From IMG/VR virus record IMGVR_UViG_3300024308_000016, positions 1-64,000 of that record: 64,000 nt of DNA; one strand, 5' to 3'. Made by a program: the position numbers and the translations under genes. Of this stretch, positions 4,826 to 40,132 are shown in pieces; position 1 is the stretch's first letter; each line of letters starts with the position of its first letter. The notes beneath the pieces are model-generated. The model had not been told where the DNA came from, searched no databases, and was given only the letters and a program-made list of their open reading frames with translations.

Positions 4826-5401
4826 ATGTTTTCCTTAATCTCAAAAAGAAAGGTATTGTGTATGATGAATCTGAACTCCCAAAACTTCAATTACAAAGGC
4901 GTATTGGTGGAAGTGATCCAACCGATAGCCAAGCACACCATCCCCACGGTGTACAACCTTGTTTTGCGAGGCGGCGGCGCCGTCTCTGCTAAGCTGCAGT
5001 CCGAGATCACGGGAGACCGCACTGGACTGAAGTATCTGGACATCCAGATCGCCATCCTCCAAGAGCTCGTCGACACCCTGACCCAAGATGAACTCGTCGC
5101 GATCTTGGAGCACGAGATGGCCCACATCCTCAACGGAGACTTGGACCTGTCAGTCGACCAAGGCAAGAGCAGGATGATCCACCGGCTGGGCTACGAGCTC
5201 GCTGCTGACCAAGGCGCCGTGAAAGCTGTGGGTGCAGCGATCACCCTGGCGGCCCAAAAGAAGGCTGAGCGCTTCACGATGTCCAAGCTCCTGAAGACGA
5301 ACAACGACAAGCTGCTGAACTTCTTCACCTGGGCTTTCCGTACCCGGATTGCCCGCAAGCGTTTCAAAGCACTGGCTGATCAAGCCAAAGCCGCCCAGTA
5401 A
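4826..5401 (+). CDS. Zn metallopeptidase (M48/HtpX-like); start may be 4862
   Basis: ELVAILEHEMAH (HExxH) plus downstream ELAAD motif. Confidence 0.75.
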   Translation: MFSLISKRKVLCMMNLNSQNFNYKGVLVEVIQPIAKHTIPTVYNLVLRGGGAVSAKLQSEITGDRTGLKYLDIQIAILQELVDTLTQDELVAILEHEMAHILNGDLDLSVDQGKSRMIHRLGYELAADQGAVKAVGAAITLAAQKKAERFTMSKLLKTNNDKLLNFFTWAFRTRIARKRFKALADQAKAAQ

Positions 5402-5428: not shown

Positions 5429-5779
5429 ATGAACAAGTCCACCGTCACCCTGGTCTCCGATACCGTCCTGGCTACCAAGGAAGTCTTTGACAAGCTCAAA
5501 GAGATGTTGCCCAAGGACAAGTACCCGATCAACCGCTTGGCTGAAGCCTGCCGCATCATGGAGGACTTCGAGAACAAGCTGACGCCAGAAACCCGTGAAG
5601 GCGGGGTGACGGCCAAATACCGGGTCAGTACGCTGAATCGGGAGTTTGCCCTCCTGGGCAAACTCTTCCACGTCACGTATTCCTCGATCGACGACGGACA
5701 GAAGATCCAGGCCGTCATCACAATCAACCACTCGGCCTGCGAAGAACTGGCAGCGGTCATCAACACGCTGACTTGCTAA
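5429..5779 (+). CDS. Hypothetical protein
   Basis: ORF preceded by aaatagaaag. Confidence 0.7.
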   Translation: MNKSTVTLVSDTVLATKEVFDKLKEMLPKDKYPINRLAEACRIMEDFENKLTPETREGGVTAKYRVSTLNREFALLGKLFHVTYSSIDDGQKIQAVITINHSACEELAAVINTLTC

Positions 5780-34114: not shown

Positions 34115-36073
34115 ATGTCTGAAAAGTTCAACTTCAACGCCCGCGCTGGCCAAGCTCAAGCCGAGGAAGTGGAAGACGTGCAACCGCGTCAACCCTCCGC
34201 AGCTTCGGGTGGCCGTGCCGAAGAAGTGCGTCGCGTCTCCAGCCCCTTCAAGACCCTGGCTCAAGGCTCTCGCCTGGTGGGTCAGCGCATCGCCGAAAAC
34301 GCCGGCTCCGACAAGTTCAATGCCCTGCTCAAGAACGTGCAGGAAGTGTTCAAGGAAGCCGATGCGGCCAAGGACGAATTCGTGATCCTGCCCATGCCCA
34401 AGGAAGTGACCCGCATGCACTTCTCGGCCATCGTGCTGGCGCGTCGTCCCGAAGTGCCCGTGGTCGAAGGCTGGTCGGTCAACCACCTGGTCGTGGCCCA
34501 GGTCCTGATGGTGGAAGCCACCGGCGACAACCCGCGCCCCTACAACGACGACTCGGTGCGCAACCGCAACTTCCAGATCACGCCCACGTCCGAAGACGTG
34601 TACAACGAGATCTTCCAGAACGCCGCTCGCAAGGTTGTCACCGATGCCCTGCGCACCCAAGTGGCCGTCAACCTGATGGACTGCGTGATCGTGCGCCGCG
34701 ACTTCGATGTCACCAACATCAACGACGTGCGCCGCCTGATCTCGGCCGCCACCACCGGCATCACCACCCGCGCCATGCAGCGTCACCCGGACTTCACCGA
34801 CTGGAACCTGTCGGGCTGGACCGACGGCATCCGCGACATCCAGCTGCCCGTGAGCATCGAGTCGACCACGACCGAAGTGCAAACGACTGCCAACGGCGAT
34901 GTCGTGCATGCGGACATGGTCATCACCGTGGGCGTGGAAAGCCGTCAGCGTGATCGCACTCCGCGTTTCAACGACGACATCAGCTCCGAGCCCGTGTGCG
35001 AAACCTCGGTGAACATCGAGCTGGTTCCCGTGAACCCGGACTTCCTGGACGATGCCGACATCAACCGCGGCCGTCGCCGTCGCCGTGACCAGGACTTCGT
35101 TCCCCAAGCGGCCTGGATGCCTCGCGCCAACATCGTGAATATCGAACAAATGCAGGCCCGCACCCTGGCCGGCATCCTGTTCTCCATCGCTTCGGTGTCC
35201 GAGCTCAACCGTGACCGCCAGTGGGCGTCGCTGTTCCGTCCCCGTCGTGGTGCCGGCCGCAAGGACGTGAACTTCTACGACATCGGCGCGCTGAACATCC
35301 ACGCAAACGTGGCCGACGAAAAGGGCGACTTCGGTCAGCCCATCGACACCACGATCCCCGAGTTCGGGGACGAAGAGTTCAGCATCTTCCTGGACCGCAC
35401 GCTGACGCAGCAGATGGCCATCGGCATCGACTGCCCGGACACCGGCCTGCAGGCGTTCTACACGGCATCGTTCGCGGCCATCGCCACCGGCGACAACAAG
35501 GTGCGCCAGCGCGCGACCATGGACGTGTTCGACGCAGCCATGGATCTGACCAACGGCGCCGTCGAGATGTTCTTCGATCCCACCAAGGATCAGATCATCG
35601 AAGGCCCCGGCGAGCGCTTCCACATGGGCTACTGGACCGACGCCAACGGCCAACGCCGTGACATCCGTCAGCTGGCATCGTTCCTGCCCGTGGCCAACAT
35701 GGTCGCATCCAACGGCTCCAACATGCGTCTGCTCGACGACTGGCTGGACACCTGGTTCGGCAGCCAGGACGAGAACTACCGCCTGGCCGAGCGCCTGAAG
35801 CTGCTCAACGCCATCTGCGACGATTCGCTCGTTGTCACTGGCATGGGCATCCGTCCTACCGTGACCGGCCACTTCGCCGACGCACTGGCCAAGGGCATCC
35901 GCGAAACCAACGTGCCTCTGGTGCCTCGTAACGGCGACCACAACACGGTGCTCCAACAGCGCCGCGTGGTGGCCGGCTACGGCACAGGCGCGCTGCTGCG
36001 CACCACCGGCGTGAGCCGCTCGCTGGAGCGCCGCGGTGGTGACGGCCGTCGCTACCGCCGCAGCTACAACTGA
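34115..36073 (+). CDS. chmA: Chimallin, phage nuclear shell protein
   Basis: 652 aa; directly upstream of nvRNAP beta' and downstream of DNA polymerase and gp52/53-like genes; strongly biased codons; DIGALNI and GYWTDANGQRRDIR segments; own promoter and terminator. Confidence 0.85.
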   Translation: MSEKFNFNARAGQAQAEEVEDVQPRQPSAASGGRAEEVRRVSSPFKTLAQGSRLVGQRIAENAGSDKFNALLKNVQEVFKEADAAKDEFVILPMPKEVTRMHFSAIVLARRPEVPVVEGWSVNHLVVAQVLMVEATGDNPRPYNDDSVRNRNFQITPTSEDVYNEIFQNAARKVVTDALRTQVAVNLMDCVIVRRDFDVTNINDVRRLISAATTGITTRAMQRHPDFTDWNLSGWTDGIRDIQLPVSIESTTTEVQTTANGDVVHADMVITVGVESRQRDRTPRFNDDISSEPVCETSVNIELVPVNPDFLDDADINRGRRRRRDQDFVPQAAWMPRANIVNIEQMQARTLAGILFSIASVSELNRDRQWASLFRPRRGAGRKDVNFYDIGALNIHANVADEKGDFGQPIDTTIPEFGDEEFSIFLDRTLTQQMAIGIDCPDTGLQAFYTASFAAIATGDNKVRQRATMDVFDAAMDLTNGAVEMFFDPTKDQIIEGPGERFHMGYWTDANGQRRDIRQLASFLPVANMVASNGSNMRLLDDWLDTWFGSQDENYRLAERLKLLNAICDDSLVVTGMGIRPTVTGHFADALAKGIRETNVPLVPRNGDHNTVLQQRRVVAGYGTGALLRTTGVSRSLERRGGDGRRYRRSYN

Positions 36074-36398: not shown

Positions 36399-36530
36399 CG
36401 CGGAACTTTCGGGAGTCTAGGAAAGACGCAGAGGAGCCGCTGGGCTCCTTTTCCTAGACTCTCTTTTTTTGTCTGCAATAAGATATGCAAACAAAACACA
36501 CCAGCTCTATAAACTGATCCCGCGATACCG

Positions 36531-36566
36531 TTTGTAGGTGGCATCGATCACTTACACCTTACTTGG
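36531..36566 (+). promoter_or_regulatory. Phage bipartite promoter motif, copy 7 (upstream of nvRNAP subunit)
   Basis: tttgta at 36531, cacttacaccttacttgg at 36549. Confidence 0.75.
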
Positions 36567-36616
36567 ACATGAGGAGAGATCCTCAAATATGTCCGCCATT
36601 ATTGAAAGGAGCCAAC

Positions 36617-39600
36617 TTGCCAATTGTTCTGGAAGTAGAAGACCACGATCGGATGTTTGCGCAAACTATCGAGCGCGTGGAGCCTATCTTTCTCAACGAC
36701 CTTGCCAACAGCACGGAAGAAGACAAAGAACGCATCCGCGCGCTGACGATGAACCAGCTCAATTCCGACACCATCTCGATCATTCCCAGATGCGGCTGCG
36801 GCCACACCAAAGGACGATTCGCCCTGGGCAAGCAATGCCCCGTGTGCCAAGATGTGGTCAAGAGCAACATCGACGAGTCAGTCACCAGCTTGCTGTGGTT
36901 CCGTAAACCGGAATTCGTGCACAAGCTCGTGAACCCGGCTGTGTGGTCGATGCTCAGCTCCTACTTCTCCAAAAGCAATTTCAACGCGATACAATACCTC
37001 ACCGACAACTTGTATACGGCGGGCACTCGTACACCTCCGGAGATCGAAAAGCTCTCCGAGTACGGCTTCGAGCGTGACTTGAACTTCTTCACCCGCAACT
37101 TCGACGACGTCTTAGGCGGGCTGATGAGCGCGTTCAAGCAAAAGGCCAACAAGCCTTATCGAGAGCTCATCGATTTCCTGGACGACAACAGGAGCCGTAT
37201 CTTCAGTGACCAACAACCCGTGCTCAACCGCGCGATGTTCGTTGCTGACAAGACCAACTTGGGCATCTACATGGAGAACTCCGTCAAAGATGCCCTTGAC
37301 GCGTACTACCACGTCGTCTCCATCGACAAAGACTTCCATGACAGAAGCGAGAAGGTGATCGTCAATCGCACTGCACGCATGCAGGCGCGTATGGCGGCGT
37401 TCTTCGACAGCTACACTGGCACCAACATGCAGCCCAAACCCGGGCATGCACGGCGCCACGTCTATGGATCTCGTGTCATCTTCTCTGCGCGAGGCGTGAT
37501 CAGCTCCACCACTGACCACCATCGCCATGATGAGATCGGAGTACCCTGGTGTATTGCGGTGCCGATGTTCCAGCACCACCTCGTCGGCATGCTCATGCGT
37601 CACGGCTTCACCTACAACGGTGCGCTGGGCTATGTGTATAGGCATGTGCACATCTACGATGAGCTGCTGCATCGCTTCTTGGACCAAATCTTCAGGGAGT
37701 ACCCGGGTGGCCGAGGACCATCGATGCTCCTCCATCGAAACGATTAGTAAACTATGAAATAGCATTCCTAATTAAGTGGACCAACTTAGTGAGGAAGCTA
37801 TGCCAATTCCAGCATTTACAAAAGAGTACAAACATCTCGGGAAGATTTACCGAGCTGTTCCCGGTTATCGACGACTGATAGTCTCTGAAGACGGAGAGTT
37901 TTATCGTCTTGGTGAAGACGGGAATCCTGCAAAGAGATGCCCGCAGTTCAAGATGCACAACACCCGCACTGAGCGAAGATCAGACACTACGTACTATTGG
38001 ACAGTACGAGAGATCGCGGATAATGGTGGCGTCAAAACCACCGGTGCTCACATCTTGGTGTGCAGAGCGTGGAATGGAATGCCCCCGGATGACGGGATCA
38101 AGTACGACGTTAACCACAAAAATAGCATCAAGACGGATAACAGGGCTGAAAACCTTGAATGGTCGACACGCTCGCAGAACATTGCTCACTGTTTCGATAG
38201 TGGGGAGAACTGCGCTGCCGTCCGGATCATCCAGCGAAACATAGAGACGGGGGAAGAGAAAATCTTCCGAAGTATCAAGAACTTCGCTGAGACCATGGGA
38301 CTATTTCGCGTGAATGTTCGCAGTTTCATCGCTGCGCATTCTAAGGAGCCTCATAACGGCTTCATCTACTCCATTGAGGAGCCGCGAAACTTCCGCATAA
38401 AGCCTGTACGTTATCAGACGAAAGAAGTGGCCTACTTCGATTATACGTCGCGAAAGCTCACAATCTGCTCCAGTATAGAGCATGCTAGTCTAGAGACAGG
38501 CATAAAGAGTGCGACCATCAAGCACGCGTGTAACCGCTTTGCTAACGATGGTGTCGCTGAGCCGACGCGTCAGTTCTTCTTCCAGTTTTTCAAACCTGGG
38601 ATGGAGTGGCCAGAATTCACTGCTGAGGAATTGGAGAAGTTCGAAAAGCGGTTCTTGAATTTTTCAAGAGCTGCAAGCGGACCTCGAAAACATAGTTCAG
38701 AATCATTTCCCTCTACAGAAATGTAGTTGTATCCCGGAACACCGGGAGTAAGTTCTTGAATTGCGGGAACATCTCGTAAGGTCCCCACTACCAAGCCAGT
38801 GTAGTAATGCGCTGGTGGCCTGGGTAACTACCAGGGTACGGTAACAAGGTGGGGAATAGAGACAATCCGCAGCGAAGCATCCGGAAACGGATGAACGTTC
38901 GACGGTCATCGAAAGGGGAAGGAAGTCGGGTAAGACTCCTGAGACCGAGTAGAGTAGGGCCCAAGTGGGTGCAGTAGCAAACTGCCGTAAGCCGAAGCGG
39001 GAACAGTCTGACCACTGAAAGGTGAAGACTAAGATATGACCTGTGCCACGCAGCTGAGTGATCGGCTGGTTTCCGAGAGGCGTGGAGGGTGTCGATGCAC
39101 ACCTGGACTTGCTAACGACAAGTTTGGACAAACAGCCCACTTTAATGCAGGGGTCGATGCAGCGAGTCTTCGGGAAACTGAAGACGGACCCTAGAGATAA
39201 GACTATCTCCATGTCGATCTTGATCGTCGTAGCTCCCAACGCTAAATTGGCCTATACGTCAGAAATGGCGTAGTGAATCTTACTGAATTGCTGGAACCCC
39301 CTAAGAGCCCCACTACCACTGCGAGCGGTAACGCAAAGCGACGGTTTGACAAGTGTGAGGATTGGACAACCAGCAGCGAAGCCTCCTTACGGGTGGAGGA
39401 ACGTTCAACGACTATGGCTGAGATGCCAGTACACTCAAGTGAGTGGAAGTAGTAAGCACCTTACCGGATAGAGCCGAAGGTGAAGATATAGTCTGACCTT
39501 TAGGGAAAGCCTAAAGACGCGCGTAATGGCGCTAGATAGTACTAACGACACTATCTGAACGCCCGTCGATTTCGATGGTCGATGGCCATCATTAAACTCT

Positions 39601-40076
39601 TTTAATTGTCAGGGAAACCCTTAGAGCCTCCGATTGGAAGATTGGGCAATCTGCAGCGAAGCCTCCCAATAGGGAGGAACGTTCAACGATCATCGAAAGG
39701 GTAGGGCGTACAGCCTGAGTAACCGAGTAGAGTAGAACCCGCTAGCCATTAAGGCGGGAAGAAACGGAGAGCTCCCAGAAATGGGAGAAGAAATGATCTC
39801 AGCCGGTGTGAAAGCATCGGACGCTCTGTACGGTGTACAGGGTCCCCTGGGTGGTGCCAGGGTAAAGACGCCCGAGTGCGGCGTGTACAATGCAAACTGG
39901 ACGCACTCAACTTGATGTTGGCGCCTGATGCCAAGATGGCCCGGTTCTGGGAAGTCTTTGCACCGGACTACAACATCTTCTTGATGGAAAACCCGATGGA
40001 GGCATCGGGCAACCTTGCGCTGACCAAACCCGTGGTGATGAGCGGGGGTGAATGGTTGGCTGACGAGGACGACTGA
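36617..40076 (+). CDS. Non-virion RNA polymerase beta'-like subunit (phiKZ gp55-like), spliced from four exons: 36617-37741 (or 37744), 39136-39243, 39568-39579, 39900-40076
   Basis: TTG start after gaaagga; Zn finger CGCG...CPVC; KPGHARRHVYGSR...SARGVI; joined exons read LLHRN|PTLMQGSMQ...VVAPNA|DFDG|DALN, the beta' NRxPTL and NADFDGD motifs. Confidence 0.9.
37742..39135 (+). mobile_element. Group I intron 1 carrying HNH endonuclease (5' splice site after 37741 or 37744)
   Basis: P gaattgcgggaa, Q aatccgcagc, R gttcgacggtca, S aagatatgacct (P7 pairs); terminal G at 39135. Confidence 0.9.
37800..38726 (+). CDS. Intron-encoded HNH homing endonuclease (NUMOD4/I-HmuI-like)
   Basis: AHILVCRAW...VNHKNSIKTDNRAENLEWSTRSQNIAH; C-terminal NUMOD1-like segments (IFRSIKNFA, CSSIEHASLETGI); gaggaag RBS. 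Confidence 0.92.
   Translation: MPIPAFTKEYKHLGKIYRAVPGYRRLIVSEDGEFYRLGEDGNPAKRCPQFKMHNTRTERRSDTTYYWTVREIADNGGVKTTGAHILVCRAWNGMPPDDGIKYDVNHKNSIKTDNRAENLEWSTRSQNIAHCFDSGENCAAVRIIQRNIETGEEKIFRSIKNFAETMGLFRVNVRSFIAAHSKEPHNGFIYSIEEPRNFRIKPVRYQTKEVAYFDYTSRKLTICSSIEHASLETGIKSATIKHACNRFANDGVAEPTRQFFFQFFKPGMEWPEFTAEELEKFEKRFLNFSRAASGPRKHSSESFPSTEM
39244..39567 (+). mobile_element. Group I intron 2 (no ORF; 3' end uncertain by a few nt)
   Basis: GCU|AAAUUGGC P1 with U-G pair; P gaattgctggaa, Q aaccagcagc, R gttcaacgacta, S aagatatagtct. Confidence 0.9.
39580..39899 (+). mobile_element. Group I intron 3 (no ORF)
   Basis: P1 GAUGGU|CGAUG-GCCAUC with U-G at the splice site; Q aatctgcagc, R gttcaacgatca, S aagaaatgatct; terminal G 39899 precedes GAC GCA CTC. 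Confidence 0.9.
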
Positions 40077-40086
40077 CAGTGATCTC

Positions 40087-40132
40087 TATCTCCCGGCTCC
40101 CATCTAGGGAGGCCGGGAGATAGGGTCTGTTT
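40087..40132 (+). terminator. Terminator after RNAP gene
   Basis: ctatctcccggc ... gccgggagatag inverted repeat. Confidence 0.7.

What the first reader, a model, noticed from the sequence alone, without database searches (positions are those of the whole stretch)
39541..39579. Intron 2 seems to lack the canonical terminal G at the junction that restores the active site
Seen: the intron end reads ...CTGAACGCCCGTC|GATTTC. Restoring NADFDGD requires a last intron base of C (39567). The guide AAAUUGGC aligns GCU|GAUUU exactly, which supports that junction. Using nearby Gs gives a frameshift (G39565, G39568) or an in-frame 2-residue insertion NA-PV-DFDGD (G39561). The G-binding G-C pair in P7 looks canonical. 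Known: group I introns almost always end in G. Inference: this is a non-canonical 3' splice site, a multi-step event, an altered active-site loop, or a sequencing error.
Basis: partly seen in the sequence, partly recalled or inferred. Interest (0 to 1): 0.7.

Follow-up and report, generated by a model that had tools for sequence, protein, structure and literature searches.

The report
Group I intron ending in C
In a jumbo phage's RNA polymerase gene, one of three self-splicing introns has to be removed right after a C, not the near-universal G, to rebuild the enzyme's active site, and this odd allele is real because the same sequence turns up in four sequencing runs from three studies.

Summary
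The window is from a chimallin-encoding jumbo phage (272 kb). Its non-virion RNA polymerase beta-prime gene is split by three group I introns.

- Exons: 36617-37741, 39136-39243, a 12-nt micro-exon 39568-39579 (DFDG), and 39900-40076.
- Productive junction: only 39243|39568 (last intron base C39567) restores NADFDGD. A one-base slide, 39242|39567, gives the same protein. An intronless homolog at 78% identity fixes the expected protein.
- Guide: AAAUUGGC (39244-51) pairs with GCU|GAUUU. An eight-intron alignment places this guide just 5' of a covarying P2.
- Every choice of a terminal G gives a frameshift or changes the motif (NDFDGD, NVDFDGD, NAPVDFDGD).
- Sequencing error is ruled out. A second assembly of the source run is identical. 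Contigs from three other runs in three studies cover 39567 with no differences, and one of those strains lacks intron 1.
- All seven related loci with a micro-exon have a G before it, including the homologous intron in L008.
- In this lineage the last bases of the intron changed and now form a 6-bp hairpin with the micro-exon.

Best reading: a natural group I intron whose productive exon ligation follows a non-G base. No RNA data exist, so the chemistry is inferred. It is a new variant of a known kind (Coxiella Cbu.L1917).

The parts
36617..37741 (+). Exon 1 of the non-virion RNA polymerase beta-prime (N-terminal) subunit gene, homologous to phiKZ gp55 and PhiPA3 gp054. It ends ...CAT CGA AAC (HRN).
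   Evidence: tblastn against 297 jumbo-phage records. 77% identity to P0003 over residues 1-377. The junction is fixed by homologs reading HRN|PTL.
37742..39135 (+). Intron 1, a group I intron of 1394 nt. It carries an HNH homing-endonuclease ORF and ends in a canonical G39135. The 5' exon's last base is C37741, not U.
   Evidence: Weak RF00028 match at 38651-39053 (18.7 bits). The core motifs are shared with introns 2 and 3. A contig from an intron-1-less strain in run X16 joins ...CGAAAC directly to CCG ACG CTT.
37776..38726 (+). Intron-1 ORF of 316 aa: an HNH_3 endonuclease with an I-HmuI NUMOD-like region.
   Evidence: Pfam PF13392 at 1.7e-10 and PF22083 at 0.004.
39136..39243 (+). Exon 2, 36 codons (PTLMQGSMQ...ILIVVAPNA). 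It ends GCU.
   Evidence: 83% identity to P0003 residues 372-412. tblastn exon mapping.
39244..39567 (+). Intron 2, a group I intron of 324 nt with no ORF. Its core is intact. The productive 3' end is C39567.
   Evidence: RF00028 at 65.8 bits against a gathering score of 50. All helices are kept in an 8-intron alignment in which 35 of 56 pairs show compensatory changes. Brute-force test of junctions.
39244..39251 (+). Internal guide AAAUUGGC. GGC (39249-51) pairs with exon GCU to form P1, with a U39243-G39249 wobble. AAAUU (39244-48) pairs with GAUUU 39568-72 to form P10.
   Evidence: Read directly from the sequence. The guide sits just 5' of P2, as in relatives L016, L018, L019, L020 and L021. 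The guide is identical in L008.
39254..39272 (+). P2 hairpin, UACGUC / GGCGUA, with loop AGAAAU.
   Evidence: It covaries with L021 (UCCAUC / GGUGGA) and other relatives. It matches the P2 loop of the Rfam consensus.
39410..39493 (+). P7 strands GACUA (39410-14) and UAGUC (39489-93), which contain the canonical G-C guanosine-binding pair. P7.1, P7.2, the 3' strand of P3, and P8 lie between them.
   Evidence: Match to the Rfam consensus. Coordinates. Helices.
39563..39578 (+). Lineage-specific hairpin. The intron tail CCGUCG pairs with the micro-exon CGAUGG: 6 bp, loop AUUU, -7.8 kcal/mol. It spans the 3' splice site and competes with P1 of intron 3.
   Evidence: Folds. Only 1-2% of shuffled or random tails fold as well. 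It is absent or much weaker in seven relatives.
39567..39567 (+). The omega position of intron 2. It is C here, where the homologous intron (L008) and the introns before the micro-exons of the other relatives have G.
39568..39579 (+). Micro-exon 3, GATTTCGATGGT (DFDG of the catalytic NADFDGD loop).
   Evidence: It is the only DFDG in the six-frame translation of the whole 272-kb genome. The same 12-nt exon lies between two introns in L008 and L010.
39580..39899 (+). Intron 3, a group I intron of 320 nt. P1 is GAUGGU (39574-79) / GCCAUC (39585-90) with a U-G wobble. It ends in a canonical G39899.
   Evidence: RF00028 at 52.3-54 bits. P1 scan. The same intron site is used in P0002/L028, L008, L009, L010, L011, L013-15 and L021.
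39900..40076 (+). Exon 4 (DALNLMLAPDAKMARFWEV...ADEDD, then stop).
   Evidence: 93% identity to P0003 residues 416-472.

Best explanation
Intron 2 (39244-39567) is an intact subgroup-IA-like group I ribozyme in an essential phage RNA polymerase gene. In this lineage it has lost the terminal guanosine (omega-G).

The first step looks canonical. The 5' splice site follows U39243, which is paired as a U-G wobble with the guide GGC (39249-51), and the P7 guanosine pocket is intact.

Productive exon ligation must join U39243 to G39568. The leaving nucleotide is therefore C39567. Equivalently, C39242 is joined to C39567 and U39566 leaves.

I infer that the register of the second step is set by P10, five pairs between AAAUU at the intron's 5' end and GAUUU at the start of the 12-nt micro-exon. 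Recognition of a terminal G does not set it. I also infer that ligation is probably less efficient than in relatives.

The loss of omega-G came with a remodelling of the last 5-7 intron bases, which now pair with the micro-exon in a 6-bp hairpin. That hairpin may keep the neighbouring G39568 out of the G pocket, may time intron 3's P1 formation, or may only be a footprint of the mutation.

Shown: the sequence, its recurrence, the junction required for function, and the ribozyme's structural integrity.

Inferred: that splicing at this junction happens, and how.
For: (1) The junction is fixed four ways: by protein homology (P0003, P0002), by the DNA of alleles without intron 2 (L028), by the contiguous P1/P10 guide, and by the homologous intron in L008, which has the same guide and the same micro-exon.

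(2) No choice of a terminal G yields NADFDGD.

(3) The allele is real and persistent. It has 0 differences in Logan's assembly of the source run and in contigs from runs X11, X16 and X21, which come from other samples and two other studies. The X16 strain differs from the window: it has no intron 1 and carries 3 synonymous changes in exon 2. The allele therefore sits in at least two genetic backgrounds.

(4) The gene is single-copy and holds the only DFDG in the genome. Its exons are intact and 77-93% identical to P0003.

(5) The ribozyme core is intact: 65.8 bits, the best of the genome's four RF00028 matches by a small margin (65.2 for the next), with all helices kept and a canonical P7.

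(6) There is a precedent. The Coxiella Cbu.L1917 intron 'lacks the canonical Omega G' beside a 34-bp exon; I have this from the title as cited.

(7) Engineered ribozymes rely on P10 and P9.0 for the second step.
Against: No RNA of this phage was available, so the ligated junction has not been seen.

By textbook knowledge (Tetrahymena G414 mutants; from memory), replacing omega-G with the canonical G pocket kept nearly abolishes exon ligation and redirects it to nearby Gs. Here G39568 lies one base away.

The J7/9 bases GA could pair with U39566-C39567 as P9.0. That would present G39568 as omega, as in L005.

P1 has only 3 base pairs.

All seven related loci keep a G before the micro-exon, so the C is a singular, possibly recent, change.

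The extra runs hold only 150-170-nt contigs at depth 2-3.
Confidence: 0.5

Rival explanations
1. The ribozyme behaves canonically and uses the nearest G, either G39568 (which P9.0 UC/GA would present) or G39565 (which sits at the family's usual distance from the GAA motif). The ligated mRNA then lacks one base or gains two, and it is frameshifted. The gene is crippled in this lineage, or only a small by-product fraction is productive.
For: The G pocket is canonical. J7/9 GA can pair with U39566-C39567, as in L005 where ...AUCG| ends the intron. Relatives place omega-G 6-7 nt after the GAA/GGA motif, and in the window G39565 sits at 6 nt. All relatives keep omega-G.
Against: The gene is single-copy and carries the only DFDG of the genome. 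By established knowledge, nucleus-forming phages depend on their own polymerases. The allele recurs unchanged in four runs from three studies and in two strain backgrounds. The phage was abundant enough to assemble at word depth about 14 in a 229-Mb run. P10 is 5 of 5 for G39568 as the first exon base, but only 3 of 5 if the exon starts at A39569 (sequence).
Confidence: 0.2
2. The active-site loop is altered. Splicing uses U39243 and the canonical G39561. The mRNA stays in frame and codes NA-PV-DFDGD, and the polymerase tolerates the two extra residues.
For: This is the only choice that is canonical at both ends, in frame, and keeps both NA and DFDGD.
Against: The intronless or intron-2-less homologs (P0003, P0002 and the jumbo-phage isolates) have N[AC]DFDGD contiguous, and the interrupted homologs keep the N[AC] that precedes the introns. 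G39561 lies only 5 nt after the last hairpin and 2 nt after the GAA motif, against 6-7 nt in relatives. The would-be 3' exon CCCGUC has no P10 pairing with the guide, and the bases AC before G39561 find no partner in J7/9 (sequence).
Confidence: 0.07
3. A multi-step or cooperative event. The tail/micro-exon hairpin (CCGUC|G...CGAUGG) acts like a P1 substrate helix with a C-G pair at the cleavage site. A guanosine attacks there, either free G or the 3'-terminal G of an already excised intron, as in trans-excision-splicing. This leaves G-p-GAUUUC..., a canonical omega-G junction, which exon 2 then attacks.
For: The hairpin is unlikely by chance (1-2%) and is specific to this allele. Intron 1 of the same gene also has C at -1 followed by GAU (AAC|GAU), and GUC|GAU recurs at 39565-70 and 39578-83. 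Ribozyme 3'-terminal guanosines do attack bound substrates in engineered systems.
Against: The proposal is wholly speculative. The 'guide' strand of this helix is exon sequence, not part of a ribozyme core. It needs three or more ordered reactions. No natural example is known to me.
Confidence: 0.05
4. Sequencing or assembly error at 39567. The true base is G, or a G is missing.
For: The junction contradicts a near-universal rule. Only contigs, not raw reads, could be inspected.
Against: The sequence is identical in the IMG assembly and in Logan's assembly of the source run. It is also identical in contigs of three other runs from other samples and studies. The sequence occurs once in the genome, so a repeat-induced misjoin is unlikely.
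Confidence: 0.02

Closest known systems
[quoted passage not shown] 2007, J Bacteriol 189:6572; title as cited in PMC3428280; the paper itself is not held)
   Same: [quoted passage not shown]
   Different: There the terminal base is A (from memory), the exon is 34 bp and the host gene is rRNA in a bacterium. Here the base is C, the exon is 12 nt and codes the catalytic DFDG of an RNA polymerase, and the host is a phage. Splicing was shown experimentally there, not here.
Staphylococcus phage Twort orf142 introns (23-nt exon between two IA2 introns; as described in PMC10136302)
   Same: A phage protein-coding gene with three group I introns and a short exon between two similar introns. There is a risk of exon skipping.
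   Different: The Twort introns end in G (from memory). The exon there is twice as long. Exon skipping here would delete the active site.
PhiPA3 intron with the endonuclease gp210 in a virion RNA polymerase subunit gene (Birkholz et al. 2024; PMC11620839 and PMC12908238)
   Same: A group I intron with a homing endonuclease that interrupts an RNA polymerase subunit gene of a nucleus-forming jumbo phage. Intron 1 of this gene carries an HNH_3 / I-HmuI-like ORF.
   Different: That is a single intron in the virion polymerase with canonical ends. Here three introns stack around the catalytic loop of the non-virion polymerase, and one has a non-G end.
Homologous intron 2 in metagenomic relative L008 (Logan SRR33299902; protein P0005, 71% identical)
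   Same: Same insertion site (GCU|GAU), identical guide AAAUUGGC, the same 12-nt micro-exon followed by the same intron 3, and a highly similar P3-P8 core.
   Different: L008 ends ...GGUAUG| with a canonical G and has no tail/micro-exon stem across the splice site. Its J8/7 deviates and it scores only 38.7 bits.
Trans-excision-splicing ribozymes (Testa laboratory; PMC2532722)
   Same: The second step depends on P10 and P9.0 alignment of the 3' exon. A terminal G of a ribozyme can be transferred onto a substrate.
   Different: These are engineered reactions acting in trans, not a natural cis-splicing intron.

Membership tests
Group I catalytic intron (Rfam RF00028) | Covariance-model score at or above the curated gathering score | tested here: met
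   Intron 2 scores 65.8 bits against 50. Intron 3 scores 52.3-54 bits. Intron 1 scores only 18.7 bits.
Group I catalytic intron (Rfam RF00028) | Conserved core helices P3-P8 supported by covariation | tested here: met
   In the 8-intron alignment A2, 35 of 56 predicted pairs have compensatory changes, and the window's intron keeps every helix. P3 CUUACU/AGUAAG against L008 CUUAUU/AAUAAG is one example.
Group I catalytic intron (Rfam RF00028) | Guanosine-binding G-C pair in P7 | tested here: met
   GACUA 39410-14 pairs with UAGUC 39489-93 and matches the family consensus.
Group I catalytic intron (Rfam RF00028) | 5' exon ends in U, paired as a U-G wobble with the internal guide (P1) | tested here: met
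   U39243 pairs with G39249 and P1 is GCU/GGC. The guide's position is confirmed by relatives. P1 is short, 3 bp.
Group I catalytic intron (Rfam RF00028) | Intron ends in G (omega-G) at the junction that gives the functional product | tested here: not met
   The last base is C39567, or U39566 in the one-base slide. No G gives NADFDGD. The sequence is confirmed in four runs.
Group I catalytic intron (Rfam RF00028) | Self-splicing with a guanosine cofactor | not testable with these tools
   No RNA data exist for this phage. All runs that hold the sequence are DNA or of unknown kind, and are kept as contigs.
[quoted passage not shown] | Two group I introns separated by an exon of a few tens of bases or less that serves both as the 3' exon of one and the 5' exon of the next | tested here: met
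   The 12-nt exon 39568-79 does both jobs. Its first 5 nt pair with the intron-2 guide (P10) and its last 6 nt form P1 of intron 3. The arrangement is conserved in L008 and L010.
Natural group I introns without omega-G (Coxiella Cbu.L1917 type) | A non-G terminal nucleotide that is fixed in natural populations | tested here: met
   The C is found unchanged in four runs from three studies and in two strain backgrounds.
Natural group I introns without omega-G (Coxiella Cbu.L1917 type) | Demonstrated correct splicing despite the non-G end | not testable with these tools
   No transcript data.
Non-virion RNA polymerase beta-prime N-terminal subunit of nucleus-forming jumbo phages (phiKZ gp55-like) | Homology to the family, and the NADFDGD catalytic loop after conceptual splicing | tested here: met
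   tblastn hits to 297 jumbo-phage records, including PhiPA3 054 and the Noxifer 'non-virion ... beta-prime'. The homolog P0003 hits Pfam Rpb1 domain 2. The gene lies directly downstream of chimallin, as it does in relatives.

The most novel reading that the evidence does not exclude
A natural, population-fixed group I intron carries out productive exon ligation with a pyrimidine (C) as the leaving terminal nucleotide. In this reading the 3' splice site is specified entirely by pairing: P10 with the intron's first five bases, possibly helped by a tail/micro-exon hairpin that masks the adjacent G. Docking of omega-G in the P7 pocket plays no part. Omega-G would then be dispensable in vivo for a canonical-core ribozyme. 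The constraint of rebuilding a 12-nt exon that codes a polymerase active site would have selected for this.
Probability: 0.45. Interest if true: 0.8.

Novelty: new variant of a known kind. Interest (0 to 1): 0.62.

Why it matters
The terminal guanosine is one of the two or three most invariant features of group I introns, and the second step of splicing is built around it in every mechanistic and structural model. To my knowledge only one natural exception has been characterised, the Coxiella intron that ends in A.

A second, independent exception that ends in a pyrimidine would be a natural test of how much of 3' splice-site choice comes from G docking and how much from P9.0/P10 pairing. This one has a canonical G pocket, sits in an essential protein-coding gene and has a G immediately next door.

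The ribozyme is small (324 nt) and could be tested directly in vitro.

The locus also shows how far homing introns can crowd a catalytic motif. In this phage group the NADFDGD codons are cut into exons of 12, 9 and apparently even 3 nt. That matters for annotating jumbo-phage polymerases, because gene callers truncate these genes.

Tried and rejected
- **My first P1 assignment was wrong.** I paired GGCGU 39267-71 with ACGCU and took GAAAU as a P10 guide pointing to G39568 as omega. The 8-intron alignment shows GGCGUA is the 3' strand of a covarying P2 and GAAAU is its conserved loop.
- **Close phage relatives.** Megablast of 36500-40100 against 50,697 phage records found nothing.
- **Exact-pattern scans of viral contigs.** Scans for the intron-2 5' region and for its last hairpin plus tail found nothing. 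A core pattern found 5 metagenome loci and 2 viral loci, none with this tail.
- **Protein search with a spurious ORF inside the intron**, meant to fish out more copies: no hit.
- **Origin of the divergent 3' domain (39494-39579).** blastn-short against all loci and the whole genome found no donor.
- **A second copy of the gene or of DFDG in the genome.** There is none.
- **Compensation of a frameshift at a neighbouring junction.** Moving intron 3's 5' site to C39580, for example, gives NAISMVD, not DFDGD. Rejected (sequence).
- **Independent translation of a C-terminal piece.** There is a stop (TGA 39556-58) three codons upstream of DFDG and no start codon. Rejected.
- **Raw reads.** Every run is held only as Logan contigs, so allele frequencies at 39567 could not be read.
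- **Papers not held.** The Coxiella papers (PMC2045182, PMC3187410) are not in the library. What I say about them beyond the cited title is from memory.
- **P9.0.** The analysis is ambiguous: GA/UC favours G39568 and AC/GU favours C39567. I did not use it to decide.
Full report
**Context**

The window is the first 64 kb of a 272,393-bp virus record. ORF 34115-36073 is a chimallin (Pfam PF25677). The gene after it is the N-terminal beta-prime-like subunit of the non-virion RNA polymerase of nucleus-forming jumbo phages. tblastn finds it in 297 phage records at 30-34% identity, including PhiPA3 gp054 and the Noxifer 'non-virion ... beta-prime'. No close relative is among the isolated phages. Metagenomic proteins reach 50-84% identity.

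**Gene structure**

Rfam finds two group I introns above the gathering score, at 39211-39516 (65.8 bits) and 39547-39820 (52.3 bits). A third, weak match lies at 38651-39053.

I set the exon boundaries with an intronless homolog (P0003, 78% identity), which reads ...LLHRNPTLQQGSMQ...ILIVVAPNADFDGDALNLMLAPD..., and with tblastn exon mapping.

| Part | Coordinates | Notes |
|---|---|---|
| Exon 1 | 36617-37741 | ends HRN |
| Intron 1 | 37742-39135 | holds an HNH_3 / I-HmuI-like ORF at 37776-38726 |
| Exon 2 | 39136-39243 | PTLMQ...APNA |
| Intron 2 | 39244-39567 | no ORF |
| Micro-exon 3 | 39568-39579 | GATTTCGATGGT, coding DFDG |
| Intron 3 | 39580-39899 | no ORF |
| Exon 4 | 39900-40076 | DALNLM... 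|

Introns 1 and 3 end in G. Intron 3 has a clean 6-bp P1 with a U-G wobble, GAUGGU/GCCAUC.

**The observation**

I tried all 5' sites from 39200 to 39261 against all 3' sites from 39520 to 39579.
- Only 39243|39568 (last intron base C39567) and its one-base slide 39242|39567 (last intron base U39566) encode APNADFDGD.
- Terminal-G choices give APNDFDGD, APNVDFDGD, APNAPVDFDGD or APNAIDFDGD, or a frameshift.

The DNA of the closest relative (L028, 84% identity) has no intron 2 and reads AAC GCC GAC TTC GAT GGT followed by intron 3.

**Is the sequence right?**

- Logan's independent assembly of the source run (X1) gives a 46.8-kb contig that matches 38900-40100 with no difference.
- A narrower search found three further runs holding the junction. 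Their contigs cover C39567 with 0 differences:
  - X11, a fermentation metagenome from another study, covers 39455-39622.
  - X16, from a third study, covers 39504-39667.
  - X21, another sample of the source study, covers 39555-39705.
- The X16 strain is not the same genome. One of its contigs joins exon 1 directly to exon 2 (...CGAAAC|CCGACGCTT...), so it has no intron 1, and it carries three synonymous differences in the first nine bases of exon 2.
- Run X17 holds an allele without intron 2.

Sequencing or assembly error is therefore excluded for practical purposes, and the allele exists in at least two backgrounds. Raw reads were not available, only contigs.

**Ribozyme anatomy**

I first took GGCGU (39267-71) as the guide. 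That was wrong.

I aligned eight related introns: the window's intron 2, the intron-2 homolog in L008, an intron in this genome's polymerase beta gene (L005), and L016 and L018-L021. In that alignment 35 of 56 predicted pairs have compensatory changes, and the architecture is common to all:
- a short guide (GGNC-like);
- then a P2 hairpin with a GNAA-like loop;
- then P3, P4-P6, P7.1/P7.2, P8 and three P9 hairpins.

In the window the elements are:

| Element | Sequence and coordinates |
|---|---|
| P2 | UACGUC (39254-59) / GGCGUA (39267-72); covaries with L021's UCCAUC / GGUGGA |
| Guide | GGC 39249-51 |
| P3 | CUUACU / AGUAAG; L008 has the compensated CUUAUU / AAUAAG |
| P7 | GACUA (39410-14) / UAGUC (39489-93), with the canonical G-C pair |

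GGC pairs with GCU as P1, with a U39243-G39249 wobble. AAAUU pairs with GAUUU 39568-72 as P10. P1 is only 3 bp. P10 is 5 of 5 for the productive register and 3 of 5 if the exon began at A39569.

**Comparison with relatives**

L008 (71% protein identity) carries the homologous intron at the same site. It has an identical guide, the same 12-nt exon and the same downstream intron, and it ends ...GGUAUG| with a canonical G.

Every other relative with a micro-exon also has a G before it:

| Locus | Junction | Micro-exon length |
|---|---|---|
| L010 | ...CACAAAG\|GACTTTGACGGT | 12 nt |
| L009 | ...ACAAACAG\|TTCGACGGT | 9 nt |
| L015 | ...AAAAGG\|TTTGATGGT | 9 nt |
| L021 | ...CACTACG\|TTCGATGGT | 9 nt |
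| L013 / L014 | ...AATAAG\| followed by a 21-nt exon | 21 nt |

The C is therefore a change specific to this lineage.

The core of the window's intron is highly similar to L008's (a run of about 50 nt is identical). From P9 onward the two keep the same three hairpins but little sequence. No donor for this 3' domain was found.

After the conserved GAA motif, relatives reach omega-G in 6-7 nt. In the window, G39565 is at 6 nt, C39567 at 8 and G39568 at 9.

**The hairpin**

The last bases of the window's intron, CCGUCG (39563-68), pair with CGAUGG (39573-78) of the micro-exon. The stem has 6 bp, a loop AUUU and an energy of -7.8 kcal/mol.

- Only 1-2% of shuffled or random tails do as well.
- Relatives give 0 to -4.9 kcal/mol and leave omega-G in a loop.
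- The left arm is the exact complement of the GAC-type micro-exon seen in L008.
- The stem spans the splice site, sequesters G39568 and competes with intron 3's P1.

Whether it is functional or a footprint of a palindrome-templated mutation cannot be told.

**Interpretation**

The gene is single-copy and holds the only DFDG in any frame of the genome. The exons are intact. The allele recurs in different samples and backgrounds. A dead gene is therefore unlikely, and the productive junction must be used to some extent.

The most economical reading is that the second step occurs with a non-G leaving nucleotide, with its register set by P10. The precedent is the Coxiella intron that 'lacks the canonical Omega G' next to a 34-bp exon (title cited; details from memory). 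Short exons between group I introns are also known in phage Twort, where the exon is 23 nt.

Against this reading:
- Omega-G mutants of model ribozymes are nearly inactive in ligation and shift to nearby Gs (from memory).
- G39568 is adjacent.
- J7/9 GA could present it through P9.0 with U39566-C39567, as in L005.

I put the non-G reading at about 0.5. Mis-splicing with a crippled or low-yield gene gets 0.2. The in-frame NAPVDFDGD variant gets 0.07. A multi-step or cooperative route gets 0.05, and error gets 0.02.

**Novelty**

The finding is a new variant of a known kind. It would be a second type of natural non-G group I intron end, with a pyrimidine. It sits in a phage protein-coding gene, next to a 12-nt exon that encodes a polymerase active site. 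What is missing is RNA evidence, and a simple in-vitro splicing assay would supply it.

Noticed in passing
window 37736-37747 and 38726-38730: Intron 1's 5' exon ends in C (CGA AAC|GAUUAG), not U. Relatives with an intron at this HRN| site have AAT| (L026, L027). The likely guide just 5' of intron 1's P2, GUUGU at 38726-30, pairs better with ACGAU, with a U-G wobble 3 nt downstream at U37744. That alternative would add an Asp (HRN-D-PTL). So intron 1 is a second junction in the same gene where the canonical rule and the protein-based junction disagree.
   Followed up: partly
window 37721-37741 joined to 39136-39190 (contig of run X16): A strain in an unrelated study lacks intron 1. It has three synonymous differences clustered in the first 9 nt of exon 2 (CCG ACG CTT against CCC ACT TTA) and is identical beyond that. 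This looks like a co-conversion tract or target-site immunity next to the HNH endonuclease's homing site.
   Followed up: partly
L009 4770-6100: A relative at 65% protein identity has three group I introns (53.9, 35.7 and 68.8 bits) packed into the NADFDGD codons. The exons between them are apparently only 3 nt (GAT, 5205-5207) and 9 nt (TTCGACGGT, 5645-5653). The 3-nt exon is inferred from the reading frame and from a GGAU/GUCC P1 like L021's. It is not shown by RNA.
   Followed up: partly
G000 about 238.3-238.8 kb (L006 1380-1900) and about 242.2-242.5 kb (L005 1511-1834): The genome has two more group I introns (58.3 and 65.2 bits). One splits a second catalytic loop...LGAD|YDGDQ..., in what looks like the virion polymerase beta-prime. 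The other splits the beta-subunit motif ...FAINDD|PKRVAF.... Both have canonical U and G ends.
   Followed up: partly
window 39558-39563 against 39238-39243: The intron tail contains AACGCC. This copies the end of exon 2 (AACGCT) and matches exactly the exon of the closest intron-2-less relative (L028: AAC GCC GAC). With the four bases CGTC removed, G39557 would be followed by a perfect NADFDG exon. This may be chance or a relic of an imprecise recombination.
   Followed up: partly
window 39570-39579 against 39689-39698: There is a 10-bp complementarity between the micro-exon (UUUCGAUGGU) and AUCAUCGAAA in the core of intron 3, next to P7 (about 2% by chance). It is not conserved in L008's intron 3. 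It could be an alternative pairing that delays splicing, or it could be coincidence.
   Followed up: no
L008 3429-3750: The homolog of intron 2 that keeps omega-G has a deviant J8/7 (GGUAAUAU instead of GAAGAUAU) and scores only 38.7 bits, below Rfam's gathering score. The window's copy scores 65.8 bits. Each copy is canonical where the other is not.
   Followed up: no
window 39565-39570, 39578-39583 and 37740-37745: The hexamer GUCGAU occurs at intron 2's 3' junction (GUC|GAU) and again 13 nt later, spanning intron 3's 5' junction. Intron 1's 5' junction reads AAC|GAU. I have no explanation for this recurring C|GAU context.
   Followed up: no
proteins P0004-P0024; loci L010, L011, L013-L015, L026, L027: In metagenomic relatives this gene is an intron hotspot. 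Introns sit after HRN, after PTL(L)Q, after PNA, after PNAD and after DFDG, in various combinations. They carry HNH_3 or LAGLIDADG ORFs. Gene callers truncate the protein at the first intron in most of these records.
   Followed up: partly
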